Below, piece by piece: positions 453-7,436 of a stretch of 64,000 nt of DNA (its first letter is position 1; the number at the start of each line of letters is the position of its first letter). The position numbers and the translations under genes were made by a program. This stretch comes from Perkinsus chesapeaki ATCC PRA-425. Its lineage: Eukaryota > Protista > Perkinsozoa. The stretch is taken from NCBI GenBank assembly GCA_013115145.1, contig JAAPAO010000093.1, positions 1 through 64,000 on the forward strand, written 5' to 3'. Under the pieces are notes generated by a model. It did not search any database. It saw only the letters and a list, made by a program, of their open reading frames with translations, and had not been told where the DNA came from.

Positions 453-678
453 TCATTGCGTTTCGTAGTACAGAATAGTCCGAATCTACGGGGTGTTGCG
501 TTTCGTTCAATTGCCGCCATTTGGCTTGTAAGGCAATAACTATGCCACCAGCTGCGTTACTACTATAGACTTTTACAAGAATGCAGTCATAGAGTATGAC
601 TCACAGTGAGACAAGACTCTCTGTCGCAGCGCAAAACAGCAGGAAGCTCCAGGGTTCAGCCTCAGTGCTCTTCGCCGA
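453..678 (+). pseudogene. Decayed LTR-retrotransposon (Bel/Pao-like) reverse transcriptase, 5' part, interrupted by the younger element
   Basis: Translations across frameshifts and stops give SLRFVV (453), YGVLRFVQLPPFGL* (487-531) and VLFA(D) (665-678). Removing the younger element and one TSD copy restores ctc ttc gcc gat gat = LFADD. Confidence 0.5.
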
Positions 679-679
679 T
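675..679. repeat. Target-site duplication, left copy (CCGA 675-678, or CCGAT 675-679); right copy at 7437-7440/7441
   Basis: CCGA(T) immediately precedes the 5' LTR and immediately follows the 3' LTR. The T at 679 can belong to either the TSD or the LTR. Confidence 0.85.
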
Positions 680-863
680 ATTCTCATCGCGAAGATTATA
701 AGTATCTTTCGTTATCGCGCGCCCTACTAGGCCGTTTCACATCGGAGTAGTATCAAAGCATGATGACTAATTAAGTAATCTTTTTGCCCTATTCCCATGG
801 TTGAGTTACTCCACGACATACCCGATCCATCTAACGAGACCATCCCCCCGACCAATGAGCACA
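679..863 (+). repeat. 5' LTR (185 bp, TATT...CACA); contains the ORF1 ATG at 797
   Basis: Identical by eye to 7252-7436 (offset 6573). Imperfect terminal inverted repeat TATTCTCAT / ATGAGCACA. Confidence 0.92.
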
Positions 864-1120
864 ATCATCCGAGAAACGACATCGCCGATATTCGTCGATC
901 AAGGCGACTAGCCGGCGAGCTGCCTACGCCAAGAAGCCTGTCAGAAATTCAGAGACAAGCTAGACGCCGCGATTCACATCATGGACTAGAAGACCATCAC
1001 CACGAACAGTTCGCAAGAAGACCACTGCAAGAGCATCAGCGGCTAATAAGAGATCATACGGTCCAATACAATCCGTGTCTTCAAGACACGCTACCCGTGC
1101 TAACCGCTCGGCGACATAGT

Positions 1121-1233
1121 CTACCCCAGGAATTAGACATCAGCCCTACCGGTCAGCGACAACGTCTACCCCGAGAGTTCGACGTCAGCCCTACCGGTCA
1201 ACAACAGCGGCTACCTCAGGAGTTCGAGATCCC
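1121..1233 (+). repeat. 45-bp (15-aa) tandem repeat x2.5 in the gag N-terminus
   Basis: LPQELDISPTGQRQR / LPREFDVSPTGQQQR / LPQEFEIP; units start at 1121, 1166 and 1211. Confidence 0.85.
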
Positions 1234-4200
1234 CGACAAGGCCCAAATCCTCAAGAGTCGGCAAATGGCTCACAATTTCGATGAATACAAACCAACTGCG
1301 CAACCACAATCTCGCCGCGCCCAGAACAACGGTCACGCGAGGCAGGCGTTCGAGGTTCGTGATCACCGAAATGAAGACTATATCAAGTACCCAACAACAA
1401 AGGAGCCGCCCGCTGGCGTCAACGACATTATAGCAGAGAACGAGCAACGTGATATTCACCGAAGTGCTACCTACCTGGCCGAAACCTGGCGCAAGAAAAA
1501 GCTACCGGTGTATACTGGCGAGGATGAGACCGACGGTGGTATCAGCTTCTCCAATTTAAGAAGGAAGTGGGAGGCCTTCTGCCAACAAGAATGGGTGTCT
1601 CACGAGAGTCCAGCGGCGGTGAGAGCTTTTCTGTCAGCATGCATCAGTGAAGAGCTGGCCGTCGACATCAAGGACGACCAGTATAACTACGTGGATGTTC
1701 AGCCTAATCGAAGAAGCTACTACAAGCAGTTCTACCACTACACTCTACGGTACCTGGGAACCAACCATCAGGACAAGTCCGTCATTACCGGGCTCATCCA
1801 GCAGATCCTCACCGACAAACAAGGCGGAAGGAAACTGAGCGATTTCTTCAAGGCCACCAATGAAAGGCTAAGGGAATTGGAGTACTGCAGCGTGGACAAG
1901 CACTCTCAGTTGCACCCCCTGCACGTTGGTTTCTCATTACAGGCATGTCTGGGAGCGCCTTTCAGAAGCTGGTGGTACGATGTATGCAAGGAAATGGGTG
2001 GCTCCGACAACATCACCACGTTCGACGATCTCAGGCATATTATGCGGGCCCTAGTAAAAAAGGCCCAGGCTCTTCGACAACAACGCCCCGATGGTTACAA
2101 TGCTGAAGGCCAGTATGTAGGACTTCCAGGAGAAGGACAGGTCTACTATGCCAACAACAACACCAACAAGAACAATCAATATCTAACCCTACAACACGGT
2201 CACGCTCCGGCTCCGACCACGGAGGAAGAAGCTCTACAACAAGCACGTCAGACTACCGGCAAAGGAGAAGACAGTCGAGTACGACAGCAGAACTACATCA
2301 AGGACAGCAGGAAGCCCAACTGCCTCCGATGTTTTGACCGGAACGGCGACCACGACGACAACTCTTGCCCGGAGGAAAAGCCCAAGCGTCAGCACGCGCG
2401 GTGTCGTTGTGGCAGCGCCCGTCACCAGCAACAAAGCTGTCCGTTATCGGACAAGGACCTCAAGTGTTTAAGATGTCACAATGATGAAAGAGCTGGTTTG
2501 CCGCATAGGTCCGGGATGTGCCCGCTGTCACTTGAGCAATTGAAGAAGGCCGATGACGACTACCAGCAGAACGAGTTCATGGAGGCTGGGTCACATCCTG
2601 TTGCTACAAGAATTTGCGTCGGCCCTCGACTGCTCGCCGATGTCATACTGGACTCGGGAGCGGGGAGATGCTATGGCCAAGCACGCTTCCTGAGGTGGCT
2701 GGCAGGCCAGCAAGGAGTTCAGCTAACTTGGGACGACGCAGAAGTCAACAACGCCGTTGGTCCTGTGGGAAACAGTCTGGACGTGAAAGGTTCCTGCAAA
2801 TTGGTGGTGTGGCCCCAGAAAGCGGCTGACGACGACAGCAAGGTCAAGATCAAAATTTATGTAGTCGAGAGGCTCATTCCCCAGCTCATCATTGGTGTCA
2901 GTGGCCTACGACTGCTGCGAGTGGGTTTGATGTTTGGCCCAGATGGCATCAGAGGCTACTCAGGGTTGACCCCGCCAGTTCATCTTGAAAAGGTAGACCG
3001 CCAGATCGTTCACAAATACATGAGCAAGGGCACAGAAGAGACCGTCAATCAGGAGGCCGACAATATCACATGCCTTTTTGATACTGTGAACTTCGTTGGT
3101 CTATGCGACGAGCCCGGCGACGACTACACTCAGGATCTGCTCATACCTGCAGGTGTCGCTGAATCGGAGGAGGCCAAGGTGACCACCGGTGTGTTAGCTA
3201 AAACCAAGCGAGGTCTCTCGCTCATAGAAGCACTGCGACATCCACTTGGAACTTTTCGAGGTATTATACTCGATGAGAAGAACTCCACCAACGAGCATCT
3301 GAGTTATAGAGCACTGCATGACTTCAATTGGACGAGAAGGCCAACTCCGACCCCAACCAACAGGAATGCAACCGAGAGACAGGCTCACAAACTGTTCAAC
3401 ACATTATCGAAGAAGAAGCTTCAGGCAGCTTACAACGACGTCATTAAGCAGTATGAAGAATTTGGTCATATTAAGAGGATCGCCCCCAACCAGATCGACA
3501 ACTACTACTACACACCCCACTTTCCTGTGGAGAAGGCTGACAACAACCGTACTACCCGCATAAGACCAGTCTACGATTGGCGGCGATGTAACCCGCTGCA
3601 ACGACTACCACCACCACAAGATGTTTCGATGTGGCCCAGCATCACGGTGACACGCTGCTACCCCTTTGCAGCTTGGTCCGACCTGAAGAATGCTTATCTT
3701 TTTGACCGCACCCCTCTAGCTACAAGAAGATCACATGGGTTTATGTTATACGAGGTGGAGAAAGGCGTCGCTTCCCTACGGCACTACCACTTCCTTGGGC
3801 TGCCTATGGGATCTAGCTCTTCAGCAGCAGCACTGCAAACCACCACAGGCATCCTGATGGAGATATCCAATGAAGCGTCGGTGGCCAGGATGTGTAGCGA
3901 TGTTATCACGCCAGCGGCGCCAATATGGGATACCTTGGTTGACCACCAAGCGGACGAGGAAGAACTACAAGGCCTACCAGAAGAAGATCTCTACGGTCCA
4001 AGTCCGGCAGCGTTAGCGCTAGCCGAGATCCTGCAACTACAAGATGAAAGCAAGAAGATGGTAAGTGCGGAAGACAGTCCAGACGGTGCTTGCAATTCAG
4101 TACACCCGAGGTGGTCGATGCTATGGAAAAGTGGCTCCAGAAGAGTGAAGTTTGTGGACGATGTCACCACCGGCGCCCAAACCAAGGCTCAGCTGCTATC

Positions 4201-6796
4201 TCTTCGGCAAGACGAGAAGGTATGCGCACAGAAGATTGGGCATATGTTCAACGACGCCAAGGAGAAGCACAGCGATGATGATAAGAGTGCCGAGGGCTTC
4301 GGACTAGTCTGGACAGGAGCAGCTGAGGGAGACCAGCTGAAACCAAGGAAGGTGAAGATTTCTTCAGCAGGGTCCGGCGCGATCCAGAAGCTCACGGTGC
4401 GCAATGTCTTATCGCTACTACATCAAGCCTACGATATCATTGGAGTGCTATCATGGACCCTTATGCCCATCAAGCTGATCCTGCGACAGTGCTACACTAG
4501 CAGGCTGCAATATGACGACTTCATTCCCGACAAGCAGACAAACGAAGTTCTGAAGACTATCGACAACTTCAACAAGGCCATAGATGAAACAACGATACCC
4601 AGATACATCGATGTGTCACGAGTGGTGGTACTTTATGCTGACGCCAGTGCCCATGGATTGGGATACGCCATCAGTAACGGTAACCCACGGGAGATTTATG
4701 TCGCTAGCAGTAAGCTCGTTCCCTTGCAGTCGATGCGGTATTCAATACTATTGAATCAATAGTTCGCAAGGAAACTCTCGCATTAGAGCACGGGTTACCT
4801 GCATTGCTGGAACGTGCTAGGGACTTCCCGTATTCGCCTCATCGTGTTTATTACGTATTAACCGACTCGAGTATTGTTCTTCAGAGAATCGAGAAAGTCC
4901 TGCGCCATAGAAGCGGAGTCACCAAAACTGTCTGGAAAACGCCCAAAGGTTGGAGTTCCTGGGAGGTCAATCACTGCAAATCTATCGTCAACCTCTTGCA
5001 CGAGCTCGAACAACTGGCAGGCGCTGAATCGGTCCATTTCGCACATTGTCCTGGTTTGGCCAACCTAGCTGACGGCTACAGCCGAGGTAGCAACCCCTTC
5101 AATGAGCACTTCTACGAGGTCGAGAACTTCTTGCACGAGCTCAACTCTAATATCAACAAAGGTCCCGCTCTTGGCACTAACCACCTTGTTGGCTTCGCAG
5201 CTGATCTAGAGGAGGAGACACAGCTCATGGACACGCCCAAAGAGAACGAGGTTACGGAAGCAACTGCGAACCTTTACAAGGAGATCGTCGACGCCCAGGC
5301 CGAGGACCCTTATACACAAATATGTGTGTTCCTACTCGCTGAGCAGGACACCGACACCAACAATCTCTCGAGTCATCTCCAAGAGCGATTGCGGGAATGG
5401 TCCCATGCCGAGCGAGCAAAGGTCCGAGCTCTATTTTTCGCCAGAGTAGAAGATGGAAGAAAGGTGTTACATTTGGCGGTAGGCCGTACTATTGTGGAGA
5501 ACGATGAGTCCAAGGCCCCTCTATATATACCAGAAACGGTGCGCGGCAGCGTTATCTCTAAGCTACACAGTTTTTATTGCCATCAGCCCGCTAAGTTTTT
5601 AATCGCCTATGCCGAAAGGCACTACTACTTCAAAGGATTGCGTAAGGCTATCAAGGCCTACTCGCGCAGTTGTCCGGGCTGCCAGCGAAGTAGAGGTCCG
5701 AAGGTATGGCCTGACACTAGACCAAGGGTGATACCAAGAGATTTCGAGGTGAACACTGTGTTAGCGCTGGATTGGGTCGGACCGGCTCGGGACCCAACTG
5801 ATAGTGGCACGGCAGTTCCCTTCGTTGGTGGTCACGGGCAACTGCTGCAACCTCTGACCGATGACCAAGCTCCGAAGTATGCGCTGCACATCTACGACAT
5901 CGTCTCTCGTTACAGCGCTTACTACTTGGCACAAGACATTGTCTTGAAGACAAATCTGCCCAATCTGCAAAGATCTTGGTCGACTTTCACCTCACCAAGC
6001 ACGGCTATCCGCAATACTTCGTTGTAGATCAAGACAAGAGCTTTACAGGAAAGCTCTTTGTCGGATGGGCGGCTTCCCTAGGTATGGTGGTGGTTACCCA
6101 AGCCCCGTATGCGGCATTTCGACGGAGTTATTTGGAGAGGCAGCACCAAGAGTTTTGGGCCCTTATAAGAGCTATTCGAGAAGAACAACAAGCAAAAGGT
6201 TGCCCTTTATCCCCGTGGTATACCATAGTACCTCAAGTATCAGCGGTGCTAAACGCTACCCCTATTGTGGACGACATCTCACCCAACGATTTGGTGTTCA
6301 ATACTCCGCCGAAGCCGCCACCGTCGATTGCGCCTAGACCCCACCATTCGCCGAACCTCGAGGCTTTCATTTCAAGACACGAAAGTGCCCAAGTATACGA
6401 CGACGATAAGTACAAGCAATATGTGGCGGAGAAGAGAGACAGCTACCAAAACATGCTGAAGACCTTCCACGAGCACACCTTGCAGCGACTACGGCGCACA
6501 GCCATCAAGATGGCTGAAAAAAGCCGCCGCCGCCAGACTCCTACCATCACTCCGTACAGGAAGGGCGACCTACTGTGGTTAGCAACTAACGGTATCAGCA
6601 AACTAAAGCCACGTTGGACTGGCCCGGTACGGGTGGTAGGTGGCGAAGAAGTTACTGGCTCAGCACAGCTACTGAGCATTGCGTCTCTAGGAGGCCGACC
6701 ACGAGGACAAGTCCACATTGCCAACGTCAAACTAGCCATTCTTGATGCTCATCAGATCGAGATCTACACGAAGATGGAAACGTCGGAACCGTCAAA

Positions 6797-6821
6797 TACT
6801 CGGCAGCACTGCTGCCGAGTA
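6797..6821. repeat. Perfect inverted repeat, 12-bp arms, 1-nt spacer
   Basis: TACTCGGCAGCA c TGCTGCCGAGTA. Confidence 0.95.
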
Positions 6822-6826
6822 CCACT

Positions 6827-6883
6827 GGACACCGGAAATACCCCAGCCTGCTGCCGCAGCAGGCTGGGGTATTTCCGGTGTCC
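6827..6883. repeat. Perfect inverted repeat, 28-bp arms, 1-nt spacer
   Basis: GGACACCGGAAATACCCCAGCCTGCTGC c GCAGCAGGCTGGGGTATTTCCGGTGTCC. Confidence 0.97.
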
Positions 6884-7251
6884 GGAGATATCCCTATGGT
6901 TAAGTCCGACAAGTTCCCCGACATAAGATACTTCATGATGGAGAGCGACAAGGAGGACAGTCACTTAGTGGTTGCGAGGTCAGTGGTACCCTTGAGCAAG
7001 TCAACAGGTTTATGGTTACAGTGCGATCAGTGCGATATATGGACCGAATCTACTCCCGAGCTATATGACTCCTACAAGGGTGATGCTCCATTCAGTTGCG
7101 GTGTTCTCGGCGTTCCATGTGTGTTTCAGGATGTGTAACGATTCACTGTATATCTAGTGTATTGTCGATCATTGTTTGATTTACTCCGCGGCCTCACGCG
7201 TATATATTGGAGTGGTAGCAACCAGTAGCTACACCTCCCGTGGCCCGCCAG

Positions 7252-7436
7252 TATTCTCATCGCGAAGATTATAAGTATCTTTCGTTATCGCGCGCCCTAC
7301 TAGGCCGTTTCACATCGGAGTAGTATCAAAGCATGATGACTAATTAAGTAATCTTTTTGCCCTATTCCCATGGTTGAGTTACTCCACGACATACCCGATC
7401 CATCTAACGAGACCATCCCCCCGACCAATGAGCACA
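7252..7436 (+). repeat. 3' LTR (185 bp)
   Basis: Identical to 679-863 and followed by the TSD CCGA(T). Confidence 0.92.

What the first reader, a model, noticed from the sequence alone, without database searches (positions are those of the whole stretch)
6878..7138. LTR-retrotransposon integrase ending in a CW-type zinc finger: candidate histone-reading targeting module
Seen: after the GPY/F-like motif the polyprotein ends with WLQCDQCDIW-x16-FSC-x6-C, immediately before the 3' LTR. Known: zf-CW (PF07496) has WxQCxxCxKW...[WF]xC...C, and its two Trp residues form the cage that binds methylated H3K4. Chromoviruses use a C-terminal chromodomain in this same position to guide integration. Both Trp and all four Cys are present here. 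Inference: an independent capture of a chromatin reader by a Bel/Pao-like lineage. I know of no described CW-integrase element, but I cannot search the literature.
Basis: partly seen in the sequence, partly recalled or inferred. Interest (0 to 1): 0.88.

Follow-up and report, generated by a model that had tools for sequence, protein, structure and literature searches.

The report
Retrotransposon integrase carrying a CW zinc finger
A family of jumping genes in the oyster and clam parasite Perkinsus has a CW-type zinc finger, a small domain that other proteins use to read histone H3 marks, fused to the end of its integrase; the copy in this window is a decayed one, and whether the finger binds histones or steers insertion is untested.

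Summary
The motif is at 6878-7138 exactly as described: W-x-Q-C-x2-C-x2-W, 16 residues, F-x-C, 6 residues, C. Chance expectation is about 0.01 per window. In this copy it is not in frame with the integrase. The window element (about 667-7436) has three frame changes, so it is a decayed copy.

The genome is Perkinsus chesapeaki. Three other divergent Bel/Pao-like elements (contigs C3226, C3148, C195) and P. olseni copies carry the same finger in frame at the integrase C-terminus. Two of them have 100% identical LTRs and 4-bp target duplications.

- **Homology:** single tails fall below Pfam's zf-CW cut-off, but their profile matches the host's own zf-CW domains (hhalign 97%, E 5e-11).
- **Fold:** AlphaFold models match solved CW domains first, though with low Z for so small a domain.
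- **Selection:** the finger has the lowest non-synonymous divergence in the polyprotein between the two species.
- **Range:** the nearest non-Perkinsus integrases lack it.
- **Literature:** I found no paper describing a CW-integrase.

Histone binding and targeting remain inferred. I rate this a new variant of a known kind, the reader domains captured by retrotransposons (chromodomain, PHD, MBD). First-stage notes of this scan flagged the same idea on other pieces of this genome.

The parts
667..863 (+). 5' LTR of the window element. The repeat is exact from 673. It contains the gag ATG at 797.
   Evidence: Direct repeat 673-863 / 7246-7436, 99% identical. One more copy of this LTR lies on contig C1620.
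779..4762 (+). Open frame 1 (frame 2): gag, protease, reverse transcriptase and the first part of RNase H. It ends at a stop inside RNase H.
   Evidence: Translation. Pfam Peptidase_A17 (Pao) 36.1 bits, above its cut-off. Frame extents.
4714..6027 (+). Open frame 2 (frame 1): rest of RNase H, the integrase H2C2 zinc-binding domain and the start of the catalytic core.
   Evidence: Pfam Integrase_H2C2 37.2 bits. It overlaps frame 1 by 48 nt.
5865..6926 (+). Open frame 3 (frame 0): rest of the integrase core and the C-terminal GPY/F-like domain.
   Evidence: Translation with WTGPVRVV. Weak rve and MLVIN_C hits. It matches integrases elsewhere in the genome.
6797..6885 (.). Two perfect palindromes: 6797-6821 (11-bp stem) and 6825-6885 (29-bp stem). 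They sit where the reading frame changes from the integrase frame to the finger frame.
   Evidence: Fold -83.3 kcal/mol, z = -12.6 against shuffles. Self-match on the minus strand only, with no other copy in the genome. Homology to the C92 relative in the finger frame begins just after 6885.
6878..7138 (+). ORF holding a linker and the CW-type finger (open frame 6746-7138, frame 2).
   Evidence: Translation. 46% identical to an open frame on contig C92. Pfam zf-CW E 0.036, 14.5 bits.
7013..7120 (+). The CW finger proper: W46-x-Q-C49-x2-C52-x2-W55, 16 residues, F72-x-C74, 6 residues, C81.
   Evidence: Alignment of 7 tails with W, Q, C, C, W, C, C invariant. AlphaFold model pLDDT 78. The top 10 structural matches are all CW domains, Z 2.8-3.5.
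7241..7436 (+). 3' LTR. The repeat is exact from 7246.

Best explanation
Shown. Window 667-7436 is a decayed copy of a low-copy Bel/Pao-like LTR retrotransposon of Perkinsus chesapeaki. ORF 6878-7138 is the remnant of its integrase C-terminal extension, a single-zinc CW-type finger. In related, uninterrupted elements of the same genome and of P. olseni this finger is translated as the last 45-50 residues of the gag-pol polyprotein, about 45 residues after the integrase GPY/F domain. It is conserved under purifying selection.

Inferred. The finger was captured from a host CW gene in the Perkinsus lineage. It acts like the chromodomain of chromoviruses. Its two invariant pocket tryptophans bind the N-terminal tail of histone H3 in a K4-methylation-dependent way. 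This tethers the integrase-cDNA complex to nucleosomes that carry the mark, so new copies would land in H3K4-methylated chromatin, for example near 5' ends of genes, in a compact genome. Which methylation state is read is not known. The window copy itself is non-functional.
For: - **Organism:**
- **In-frame IN-CW polyproteins:**
  - C3226 has one ORF of 1586 aa, 188-nt LTRs 100% identical, TG..CA ends and a GTAT target duplication.
  - C3148 has an open frame of 1655 aa, 286-nt LTRs 100% identical and an AAGG duplication.
  - C195 has an open frame of 1702 aa.
  - P. olseni has an open frame of 1524 aa ending in the finger, and protein P0155.
- **Conservation:** the three integrases are only 32-35% identical, yet W, Q, C, C, W, C, C are invariant.
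- **Selection:** between the P. chesapeaki C3148 copy and the P. olseni copy, synonymous sites are saturated (pS 0.85). The finger has pN 0.13, the lowest of the five polyprotein segments of at least 37 codons compared (integrase 0.17, RT 0.24, gag 0.25).
- **CW identity by sequence:** 6 of 7 tails hit Pfam zf-CW. The tail profile finds MORC3/4 CW first in the PDB. hhalign against five host CW domains, at least two above Pfam's cut-off, gives 97.1%, E 5e-11.
- **CW identity by fold:** for the C3226 tail, Foldseek's top hit is the SDG8 CW-H3K4me1 complex (probability 0.99, 0.9 A over 33 columns). For that tail all listed VIA-align rows, and for the window tail the ten best, are CW domains. The two Atlas clusters with TM above 0.5 carry zf-CW.
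- **Pocket residues:** two of the CW tryptophans form the methyl-lysine pocket (PMC9043364). MORC2, which lacks the floor Trp, does not bind (PMC5811534). Both are invariant here.
- **Host ligand:** the host H3 has the canonical ARTKQTARKS tail.
- **Precedents for captured reader domains:** chromodomain, PHD and MBD (PMC6673714).
- **Insertion context, anecdotal:** the C3226 copy lies 118 bp upstream of the ATG of a same-strand 403-aa ORF. The P. olseni copy lies about 0.9 kb from the start of a divergent thiolase gene.
Against: - No binding or targeting data exist.
- Every single tail is below Pfam's gathering score (14.5-17 bits where the score was shown, against 27.5).
- Structural Z-scores are low (at most 3.8), as expected for about 45 residues, so they are not decisive alone.
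- The third (core) Trp of canonical CW is Phe or Val here.
- Only 4-11 residues follow the last Cys. In known CW readers a C-terminal element completes the pocket and its removal abolishes binding (PMC9043364).
- Each family has only 1-3 copies in the assembly, so no insertion-site statistics are possible.
- No RNA run holds the element.
- No uninterrupted copy of the window's own sub-family was found. Its relative on C92 has the finger cut short by a stop.
Confidence: 

Rival explanations
1. The tail has the CW fold and is a functional part of the integrase, but it does not read H3K4 methylation. It might bind unmodified H3, another host protein, nucleic acid or another integrase subunit, as the MORC2 CW binds its own ATPase module.
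For: Only 4-11 residues follow Cys4, so the lid that completes the pocket in ZCWPW1, ZCWPW2 and ASHH2 may be missing (PMC9043364; alignment). Some CW domains do not bind histones (PMC5811534). The core Trp is replaced.
Against: Both pocket tryptophans and the Gln of W-x-Q-C are invariant across tails that are 26-47% identical. The non-binding MORC2 CW lacks one of them (PMC5811534). In two lineages the post-Cys4 tail is Pro-containing and acidic (CGRPQDADA, CGGPQDHTAV). From memory, not checked here, MORC3 has a similar C-terminus.
Confidence: 0.33
2. The finger is a PHD-like or other treble-clef zinc finger, not a CW domain.
For: Protein-language-model neighbours of the tail are PHD clusters (scores 0.82-0.89, leads only). 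PHD fingers fill the lower ranks of the Foldseek lists.
Against: The motif has only four Cys ligands, enough for one zinc, whereas a PHD finger needs eight ligands (my knowledge). Pfam PHD matched 1 of 7 tails against 6 of 7 for zf-CW. hhalign to host CW domains gives 97%. All the best VIA-align rows are CW domains.
Confidence: 0.05
3. The window copy is functional, and the finger is added to the integrase by programmed -1 ribosomal frameshifting stimulated by the very stable hairpins at 6797-6885.
For: The frame change is -1. The two frames overlap over 6746-6926, and two exceptionally stable hairpins lie in the overlap.
Against: The same copy has two more -1 frame changes in the middle of RNase H and of the integrase core, where no retroelement frameshifts (alignment to C3226). 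The three uninterrupted relatives need no frameshift. I saw no slippery heptamer just upstream of 6797.
Confidence: 0.03
4. It is a chance Cys/Trp pattern, or an exon of a host CW gene that happens to lie beside a dead element.
For: The single-sequence Pfam hit is weak (E 0.036). The ORF is out of frame with the integrase.
Against: Chance expectation is about 0.01 per window. The same finger sits at the same place in four other element tails. The ORF lies between the integrase and the 3' LTR. A truncated second copy on C1620 carries the ORF's end together with the LTR.
Confidence: 0.02

Closest known systems
Chromoviruses (Ty3/gypsy elements such as Tf1 and MAGGY, with a chromodomain at the integrase C-terminus; Gao et al. 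2008 as cited in PMC6673714)
   Same: A small histone-tail reader is fused to the C-terminal end of the integrase after the GPY/F domain. The proposed role is to tether integration to marked chromatin.
   Different: The fold differs: chromo barrel against a single-zinc CW finger. The expected mark differs: H3K9me heterochromatin against H3K4 methylation. The superfamily differs: Ty3/gypsy against Pao-type. No Pfam Chromo hit was found in any polyprotein here.
[quoted passage not shown] 2005, as cited in PMC6673714)
   Same: A zinc-finger histone reader is encoded by the element. By my own knowledge CW and PHD are structurally related, and they share the lower ranks of the fold lists.
   Different: PHD is a two-zinc finger. 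Here there are four Cys, one zinc site and the W-x-Q-C...W signature of CW.
CopiaMBD elements of arthropods (PMC6673714)
   Same: A lineage-restricted capture of a host chromatin or DNA-mark reader by an LTR retrotransposon. The restricted range argues for host origin.
   Different: That domain reads methyl-CpG DNA, not a histone tail, and sits in a Copia element. Its binding was shown experimentally, which is not the case here.
Cellular CW readers: MORC3/MORC4, ZCWPW1/2, ASHH2 (SDG8) (PDB 5svx, 4z0o, 5yvx; PMC9043364)
   Same: Four zinc-binding Cys, the two pocket Trp and the beta-hairpin core. These are the best sequence-profile and structure matches.
   Different: The core Trp is Phe or Val. 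The C-terminal lid region is very short. The domain is fused to a retroelement integrase instead of an ATPase, SET or PWWP module.
Bel/Pao LTR retrotransposons (PMC3118150)
   Same: The domain order is PR-RT-RH-IN. Pfam PF05380 is above its cut-off. LTRs are short and target duplications are 4 bp.
   Different: The host is an alveolate protist, whereas that survey treats the subclass as metazoan. In the uninterrupted relatives gag carries CCCH, not CCHC, fingers. The integrase ends in a CW finger.

Membership tests
zf-CW (Pfam PF07496) | Four conserved Cys with CW spacing (C-x2-4-C ... C-x6-C), coordinating one zinc | tested here: met
   Invariant in all 7 tails, including the window's C49, C52, C74 and C81. 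Zinc binding itself was not measured.
zf-CW (Pfam PF07496) | Two pocket tryptophans (W-x-Q-C and C-x2-W) that form the methyl-lysine pocket (PMC9043364, PMC5811534) | tested here: met
   W46 and W55 in the window. Both are invariant in 7 tails.
zf-CW (Pfam PF07496) | Third, core tryptophan before Cys3 (W-x-C) | tested here: not met
   It is Phe in 6 tails and Val in one. The position stays hydrophobic and is usually aromatic, but it is not Trp.
zf-CW (Pfam PF07496) | Score above Pfam's gathering threshold (27.5 bits) | tested here: not met
   Window 14.5 bits; C3226 16.4-17.1 bits; best tail E 6.6e-5; genome scan of C3148 22.6 bits covering model positions 2-46.
zf-CW (Pfam PF07496) | Profile-level homology to accepted CW domains | tested here: met
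   hhalign of the tail profile against five CW domains of the same genome gives probability 97.1%, E 5.1e-11, 47 columns. The tail profile's top 8 PDB hits are MORC3/4 CW.
zf-CW (Pfam PF07496) | CW fold (beta-hairpin carrying the W-x-Q-C and C-x-x-W strands, followed by short helices) | tested here: met
   AlphaFold pLDDT 78 and 74.6. Foldseek's top hit is 5yvx, probability 0.99 and 0.80. All the best VIA-align rows are CW domains, but Z is only 2.2-3.8. The Atlas rows with TM 0.59 and 0.57 carry zf-CW.
zf-CW (Pfam PF07496) | C-terminal element that completes the binding pocket (ZCWPW1 W303, ZCWPW2 F78, ASHH2 alpha1 helix; PMC9043364) | tested here: inconclusive
   Only 4-11 residues follow Cys4 before the stop. 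Their role cannot be judged from sequence.
zf-CW (Pfam PF07496) | Binding of the histone H3 tail that depends on K4 methylation | not testable with these tools
   A complex prediction with the host H3 tail gave no verdict (see Tried and rejected).
Bel/Pao LTR retrotransposon | Domain order PR-RT-RNase H-IN, with the Pao-specific Pfam region PF05380 | tested here: met
   PF05380 scores: window 36.1, C3226 51.7, C3148 52.8, C195 57.5 bits, against a cut-off of 22.3.
Bel/Pao LTR retrotransposon | Flanking LTRs with TG..CA ends and a short target-site duplication | tested here: met
   C3226 has TG..CA ends and a GTAT duplication. C3148 starts with TG, ends in TA and has an AAGG duplication. The window copy has a 99% identical LTR pair, but I could not identify a duplication.
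Bel/Pao LTR retrotransposon | Placement inside the Bel/Pao clade in an RT phylogeny with reference elements | not tested
   No reference set of classified RT sequences was on hand.
Chromovirus (Ty3/gypsy with chromodomain) | Chromodomain at the integrase C-terminus | tested here: not met
   No Pfam Chromo hit in any of the polyproteins. It works like one by position, but it is not a member.

The most novel reading that the evidence does not exclude
A Perkinsus-specific group of Pao-type retrotransposons captured a host CW finger once. It uses the finger to read H3K4 methylation directly with its own integrase. That would make it the first LTR element known to aim at active-chromatin nucleosomes, such as promoter-proximal ones, through a built-in histone reader rather than through a host tethering factor. 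It would be a natural counterpart to the heterochromatin-seeking chromoviruses.
Probability: 0.4. Interest if true: 0.8.

Novelty: new variant of a known kind. Interest (0 to 1): 0.62.

Why it matters
Integrase-fused reader domains are the clearest natural examples of how mobile elements choose where to land. The chromodomain is the one such domain with a functional study cited in the papers read here (Gao et al. 2008, via PMC6673714), and it reads a repressive mark.

A CW finger would add a second histone reader with a different expected specificity, H3K4 methylation, in a different superfamily and in a protist parasite with a compact genome. That gives a direct test of whether elements can use marks of active chromatin to find safe sites next to genes.

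It also widens the known contexts of the CW domain. It shows young Pao-type elements, with identical LTRs, in an alveolate. It may also be of practical interest for chromatin and gene-delivery work in Perkinsus, for which genetic tools are being built (bioRxiv 10.1101/2021.06.11.447996).

Tried and rejected
1. **Complex prediction.** I folded the C3226 tail with residues 2-36 of the host histone H3 and zinc. The score was 0.29, under the mark of 0.34, so there is no verdict either way.
2. **Word-based homologue search.** The search with the C3226 tail region found only the protein itself.
3. **Language-model neighbours.** The nearest clusters were PHD clusters at scores below 0.9. These are leads only and were outweighed by the profile and fold evidence.
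4. **Uninterrupted copy of the window's own sub-family.** None was found.
   - C1620 holds only the last 29 nt of the ORF plus the UTR and LTR.
   - C92 holds a 46%-identical relative whose finger is cut by a stop after the second Trp. Its upstream part shows no BLASTP similarity to the window's integrase tail.
5. **Insertion-site statistics.** These are impossible with 1-3 copies per family. Flanking ORFs gave no Pfam identity.
6. **Programmed frameshifting.** I considered it as an explanation for the frame change at the palindromes and rejected it (see rivals).
7. **Expression.** No RNA run holds the stretch, which is no proof of silence.
8. **Gene annotation of the P. chesapeaki loci.** Not obtainable, because records of the window's own genome are withheld.
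9. **EVE domain.** A borderline Pfam EVE hit lies on the C195 integrase C-terminus (23.4 bits, cut-off 23). I did not follow it up and do not rely on it.

I built no consensus and no joined or repaired frame.

Full report
**What is in the window**

The + strand between about 667 and 7436 holds one LTR-retrotransposon copy. A direct repeat of about 190 nt (673-863 and 7246-7436, 99% identical) brackets it. Four successive open frames lie inside:
- 779-4762: gag, protease, RT and the start of RNase H. Pfam Peptidase_A17/Pao scores 36.1 bits.
- 4714-6027: the rest of RNase H and the integrase H2C2 domain (37.2 bits).
- 5865-6926: the integrase core remainder and a GPY/F-like WTGPVRVV.
- 6746-7138: this frame contains the ORF of the finding, 6878-7138.

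This pattern occurs once in the six-frame translation of the window. In 200 shuffles the core averaged 0.01 and the full motif 0 per 64 kb.

The finger is not in the integrase frame in this copy. All three junctions between the four frames are shifts of -1 with overlapping open stretches. The first lies inside RNase H and the second inside the integrase catalytic core, judged against an uninterrupted relative. This is therefore a decayed copy.

The third junction coincides with two perfect palindromes, 6797-6821 and 6825-6885 (-83 kcal/mol, z -12.6). They occur nowhere else in the genome. Similarity to the nearest relative of the finger ORF (contig C92) starts directly after the second palindrome. 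Contigs built from public runs of a second study reproduce 6000-7148 without a difference. A contig from the other study stops inside the palindrome. The break is therefore real DNA.

I describe the breaks only.

**The organism and the family**

A protein search identifies the genome as Perkinsus chesapeaki, an alveolate parasite of bivalves. Searching the whole 41.7-Mb assembly with the finger ORF, with Pfam zf-CW and with a relative's tail gave the key result. Three other elements carry the same finger in frame at the end of long, uninterrupted polyproteins:
- **C3226.** One ORF of 1586 aa runs from an ATG in the 5' LTR to a stop in the 3' LTR. The LTRs are 188 nt, 100% identical, with TG..CA ends and a GTAT target duplication.
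- **C3148.** An open frame of 1655 aa, 286-nt LTRs 100% identical and an AAGG duplication.
- **C195.** An open frame of 1702 aa that fills a 5.3-kb contig.

Their integrase-to-finger regions are only 32-35% identical to each other, yet W, Q, C, C, W, C, C of the finger are invariant.

A profile of these regions was searched against 1.84 billion representative proteins. Among the best 150 hits, only Perkinsus proteins carry the finger. These come from P. chesapeaki and P. olseni, including a 1469-aa RT-integrase-finger protein. The closely related P. marinus protein on record is partial and ends before the tail. The next relatives, Pao-type polyproteins from metagenomes, end shortly after the GPY/F domain. 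The window element is a fourth, more distant lineage (23-37% identity in the integrase tail).

**Is it a CW domain?**

Single tails score below Pfam's gathering threshold (14.5-17 bits where the score was shown, against 27.5; 22.6 bits in the genome scan of C3148). Even so, zf-CW is the family matched by 6 of 7 tails. Further evidence:
- A profile of the seven tails finds MORC3 and MORC4 CW chains as its top eight PDB hits (E 0.006-0.12).
- Against a profile of five CW domains of Perkinsus' own genes, at least two of which pass Pfam's threshold, hhalign gives probability 97.1%, E 5e-11, over 47 columns, the whole finger.
- AlphaFold models (pLDDT 78 for the window tail, 74.6 for C3226) show a beta-hairpin followed by two short helices.
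- Foldseek ranks the SDG8/ASHH2 CW-H3K4me1 complex first for both models (probability 0.80 and 0.99; 0.9 A over 33 columns for C3226).
- With VIA-align, all listed rows for C3226 and the ten best rows for the window tail are CW domains (ZCWPW2, SDG8, MORC2/3/4, ASHH2). Z is only 2.2-3.8, which is what about 45 residues allow.
- In the ESM Atlas, the only two rows with TM above 0.5 are zf-CW clusters.

A PHD finger is unlikely, because the motif has four Cys where, by my knowledge, a PHD finger needs eight zinc ligands.

There are two departures from canonical CW. The third, core Trp is Phe or Val. Only 4-11 residues follow the last Cys.

**Is it functional?**

I compared the C3148 copy with its P. 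olseni counterpart. Synonymous sites are saturated (pS about 0.85). Non-synonymous divergence in the finger is 0.13. That is lower than in the integrase (0.17), the linker (0.16), RT-RNase H (0.24) and gag-protease (0.25). The only other segment, the 6 codons after the finger, is too short to judge. Together with the invariant residues across four lineages, this shows purifying selection on the finger as part of the polyprotein. Identical LTRs in three copies point to very recent integration.

**How it most likely works**

This part is inferred. In CW readers the two conserved tryptophans form the pi-cation pocket for methylated H3K4. A variable C-terminal element completes the pocket (PMC9043364). 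MORC2, which lacks the floor Trp, binds no histone peptide (PMC5811534). Both tryptophans are invariant here, and the host H3 tail is canonical.

The position copies that of the chromodomain in chromoviruses. Chromodomains, PHD fingers and an MBD are documented captures by retrotransposons (PMC6673714). I therefore propose that the finger tethers the integrase to H3K4-methylated nucleosomes.

The short C-terminus is the main reason for doubt about affinity or specificity. A non-histone role has about one chance in three.

The two insertion contexts that could be read are compatible with gene-proximal integration, but they prove nothing. One copy lies 118 bp upstream of an ORF's ATG. The other lies about 0.9 kb from a divergent thiolase gene.

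**Known or new?**

The ten full-text searches found no paper that describes a CW finger in a retroelement integrase. The hits concern MORC restriction factors or plant SET genes. The proteins are annotated as hypothetical. The library lacks most subscription journals and Repbase reports, so absence is not proof.

Two first-stage notes of this scan (s1-225896, s1-232669) flagged the same idea on other pieces of this genome. They are probably the elements analysed here. They are unchecked notes and not independent evidence.

I class the finding as a new variant of a known kind: reader domains captured by LTR-retrotransposon integrases.

**Verdict**

- **Observation:** partly confirmed. The motif and coordinates are exact. 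The frame continuity and the 'immediately before the LTR' are not.
- **Interpretation:** supported for identity, architecture and lineage-restricted capture. It is open for histone binding and targeting.

Noticed in passing
window 6797-6821 and 6825-6885: Two perfect palindromes (11-bp and 29-bp stems, 3-nt loops) lie inside coding sequence, exactly where the frame changes. They are unique in the genome and reproduced in contigs of independent runs. Their origin is unexplained; an inverted duplication, hairpin repair or a tiny foldback insertion are possibilities.
   Followed up: partly
L025:6560-6580 (C3226), L042:3524-3540 (C3148), L046:7810-7825 (P. olseni): The same 12-nt motif TTCTACCGGGAT follows the 5' LTR in C3226 and C3148, and about 20 nt after the repeat found in the P. 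olseni copy. It is probably the primer-binding site. It has no TGG start and lies inside the polyprotein ORF, where C3226, C3148 and C195 read S-T-G-I. In C3226 and C3148 the ORF starts within the 5' LTR. The window element lacks this motif.
   Followed up: partly
L025 ORF residues 235-300; L042 ORF residues 251-337: The gag region of the uninterrupted elements carries CCCH-type zinc fingers (Pfam zf-CCCH, zf-CCCH_4, Torus) instead of the usual CCHC knuckles of retroelement nucleocapsids.
   Followed up: partly
whole element; G000 contigs C3226, C3148, C195: These are Pao-type (PF05380) LTR elements with identical LTRs in an alveolate parasite of bivalves. The BEL/Pao subclass is treated as metazoan in PMC3118150. 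The nearest non-Perkinsus relatives come from unnamed metagenome contigs, so the origin is open: an old alveolate lineage or transfer from a mollusc host.
   Followed up: no
window 1103-1237: Three tandem 45-nt units (64-80% identical) lie in the gag region. They encode a repeated 15-residue motif (..LPQEFD.SPTGQ..).
   Followed up: no
G000:C1091:112153-115281 (L007, minus-strand ORF 1165-3039): A host gene of 624 aa holds two CW fingers, one scoring 39-44 bits against Pfam zf-CW. The window finger is 44% identical to the second over 41 residues. It is a possible relative of the captured domain.
   Followed up: partly
L043 polyprotein residues 1563-1661 (C195): A borderline Pfam EVE-domain hit (23.4 bits, cut-off 23) lies over the integrase C-terminal region that includes the finger. 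It may be spurious. An earlier scan note mentions 'a further small domain' next to a CW finger.
   Followed up: no
L046:7120-7516 (P. olseni): An array of 29-nt repeats and a 65-nt repeat pair lies directly upstream of the 5' LTR of the P. olseni element, between it and a divergent thiolase gene.
   Followed up: no
G000:C1620:17544-17868: This is a truncated second copy of the window family. It keeps only the last 29 nt of the finger ORF, the untranslated stretch and the LTR (about 97% identical), and starts abruptly at window position 7110.
   Followed up: partly
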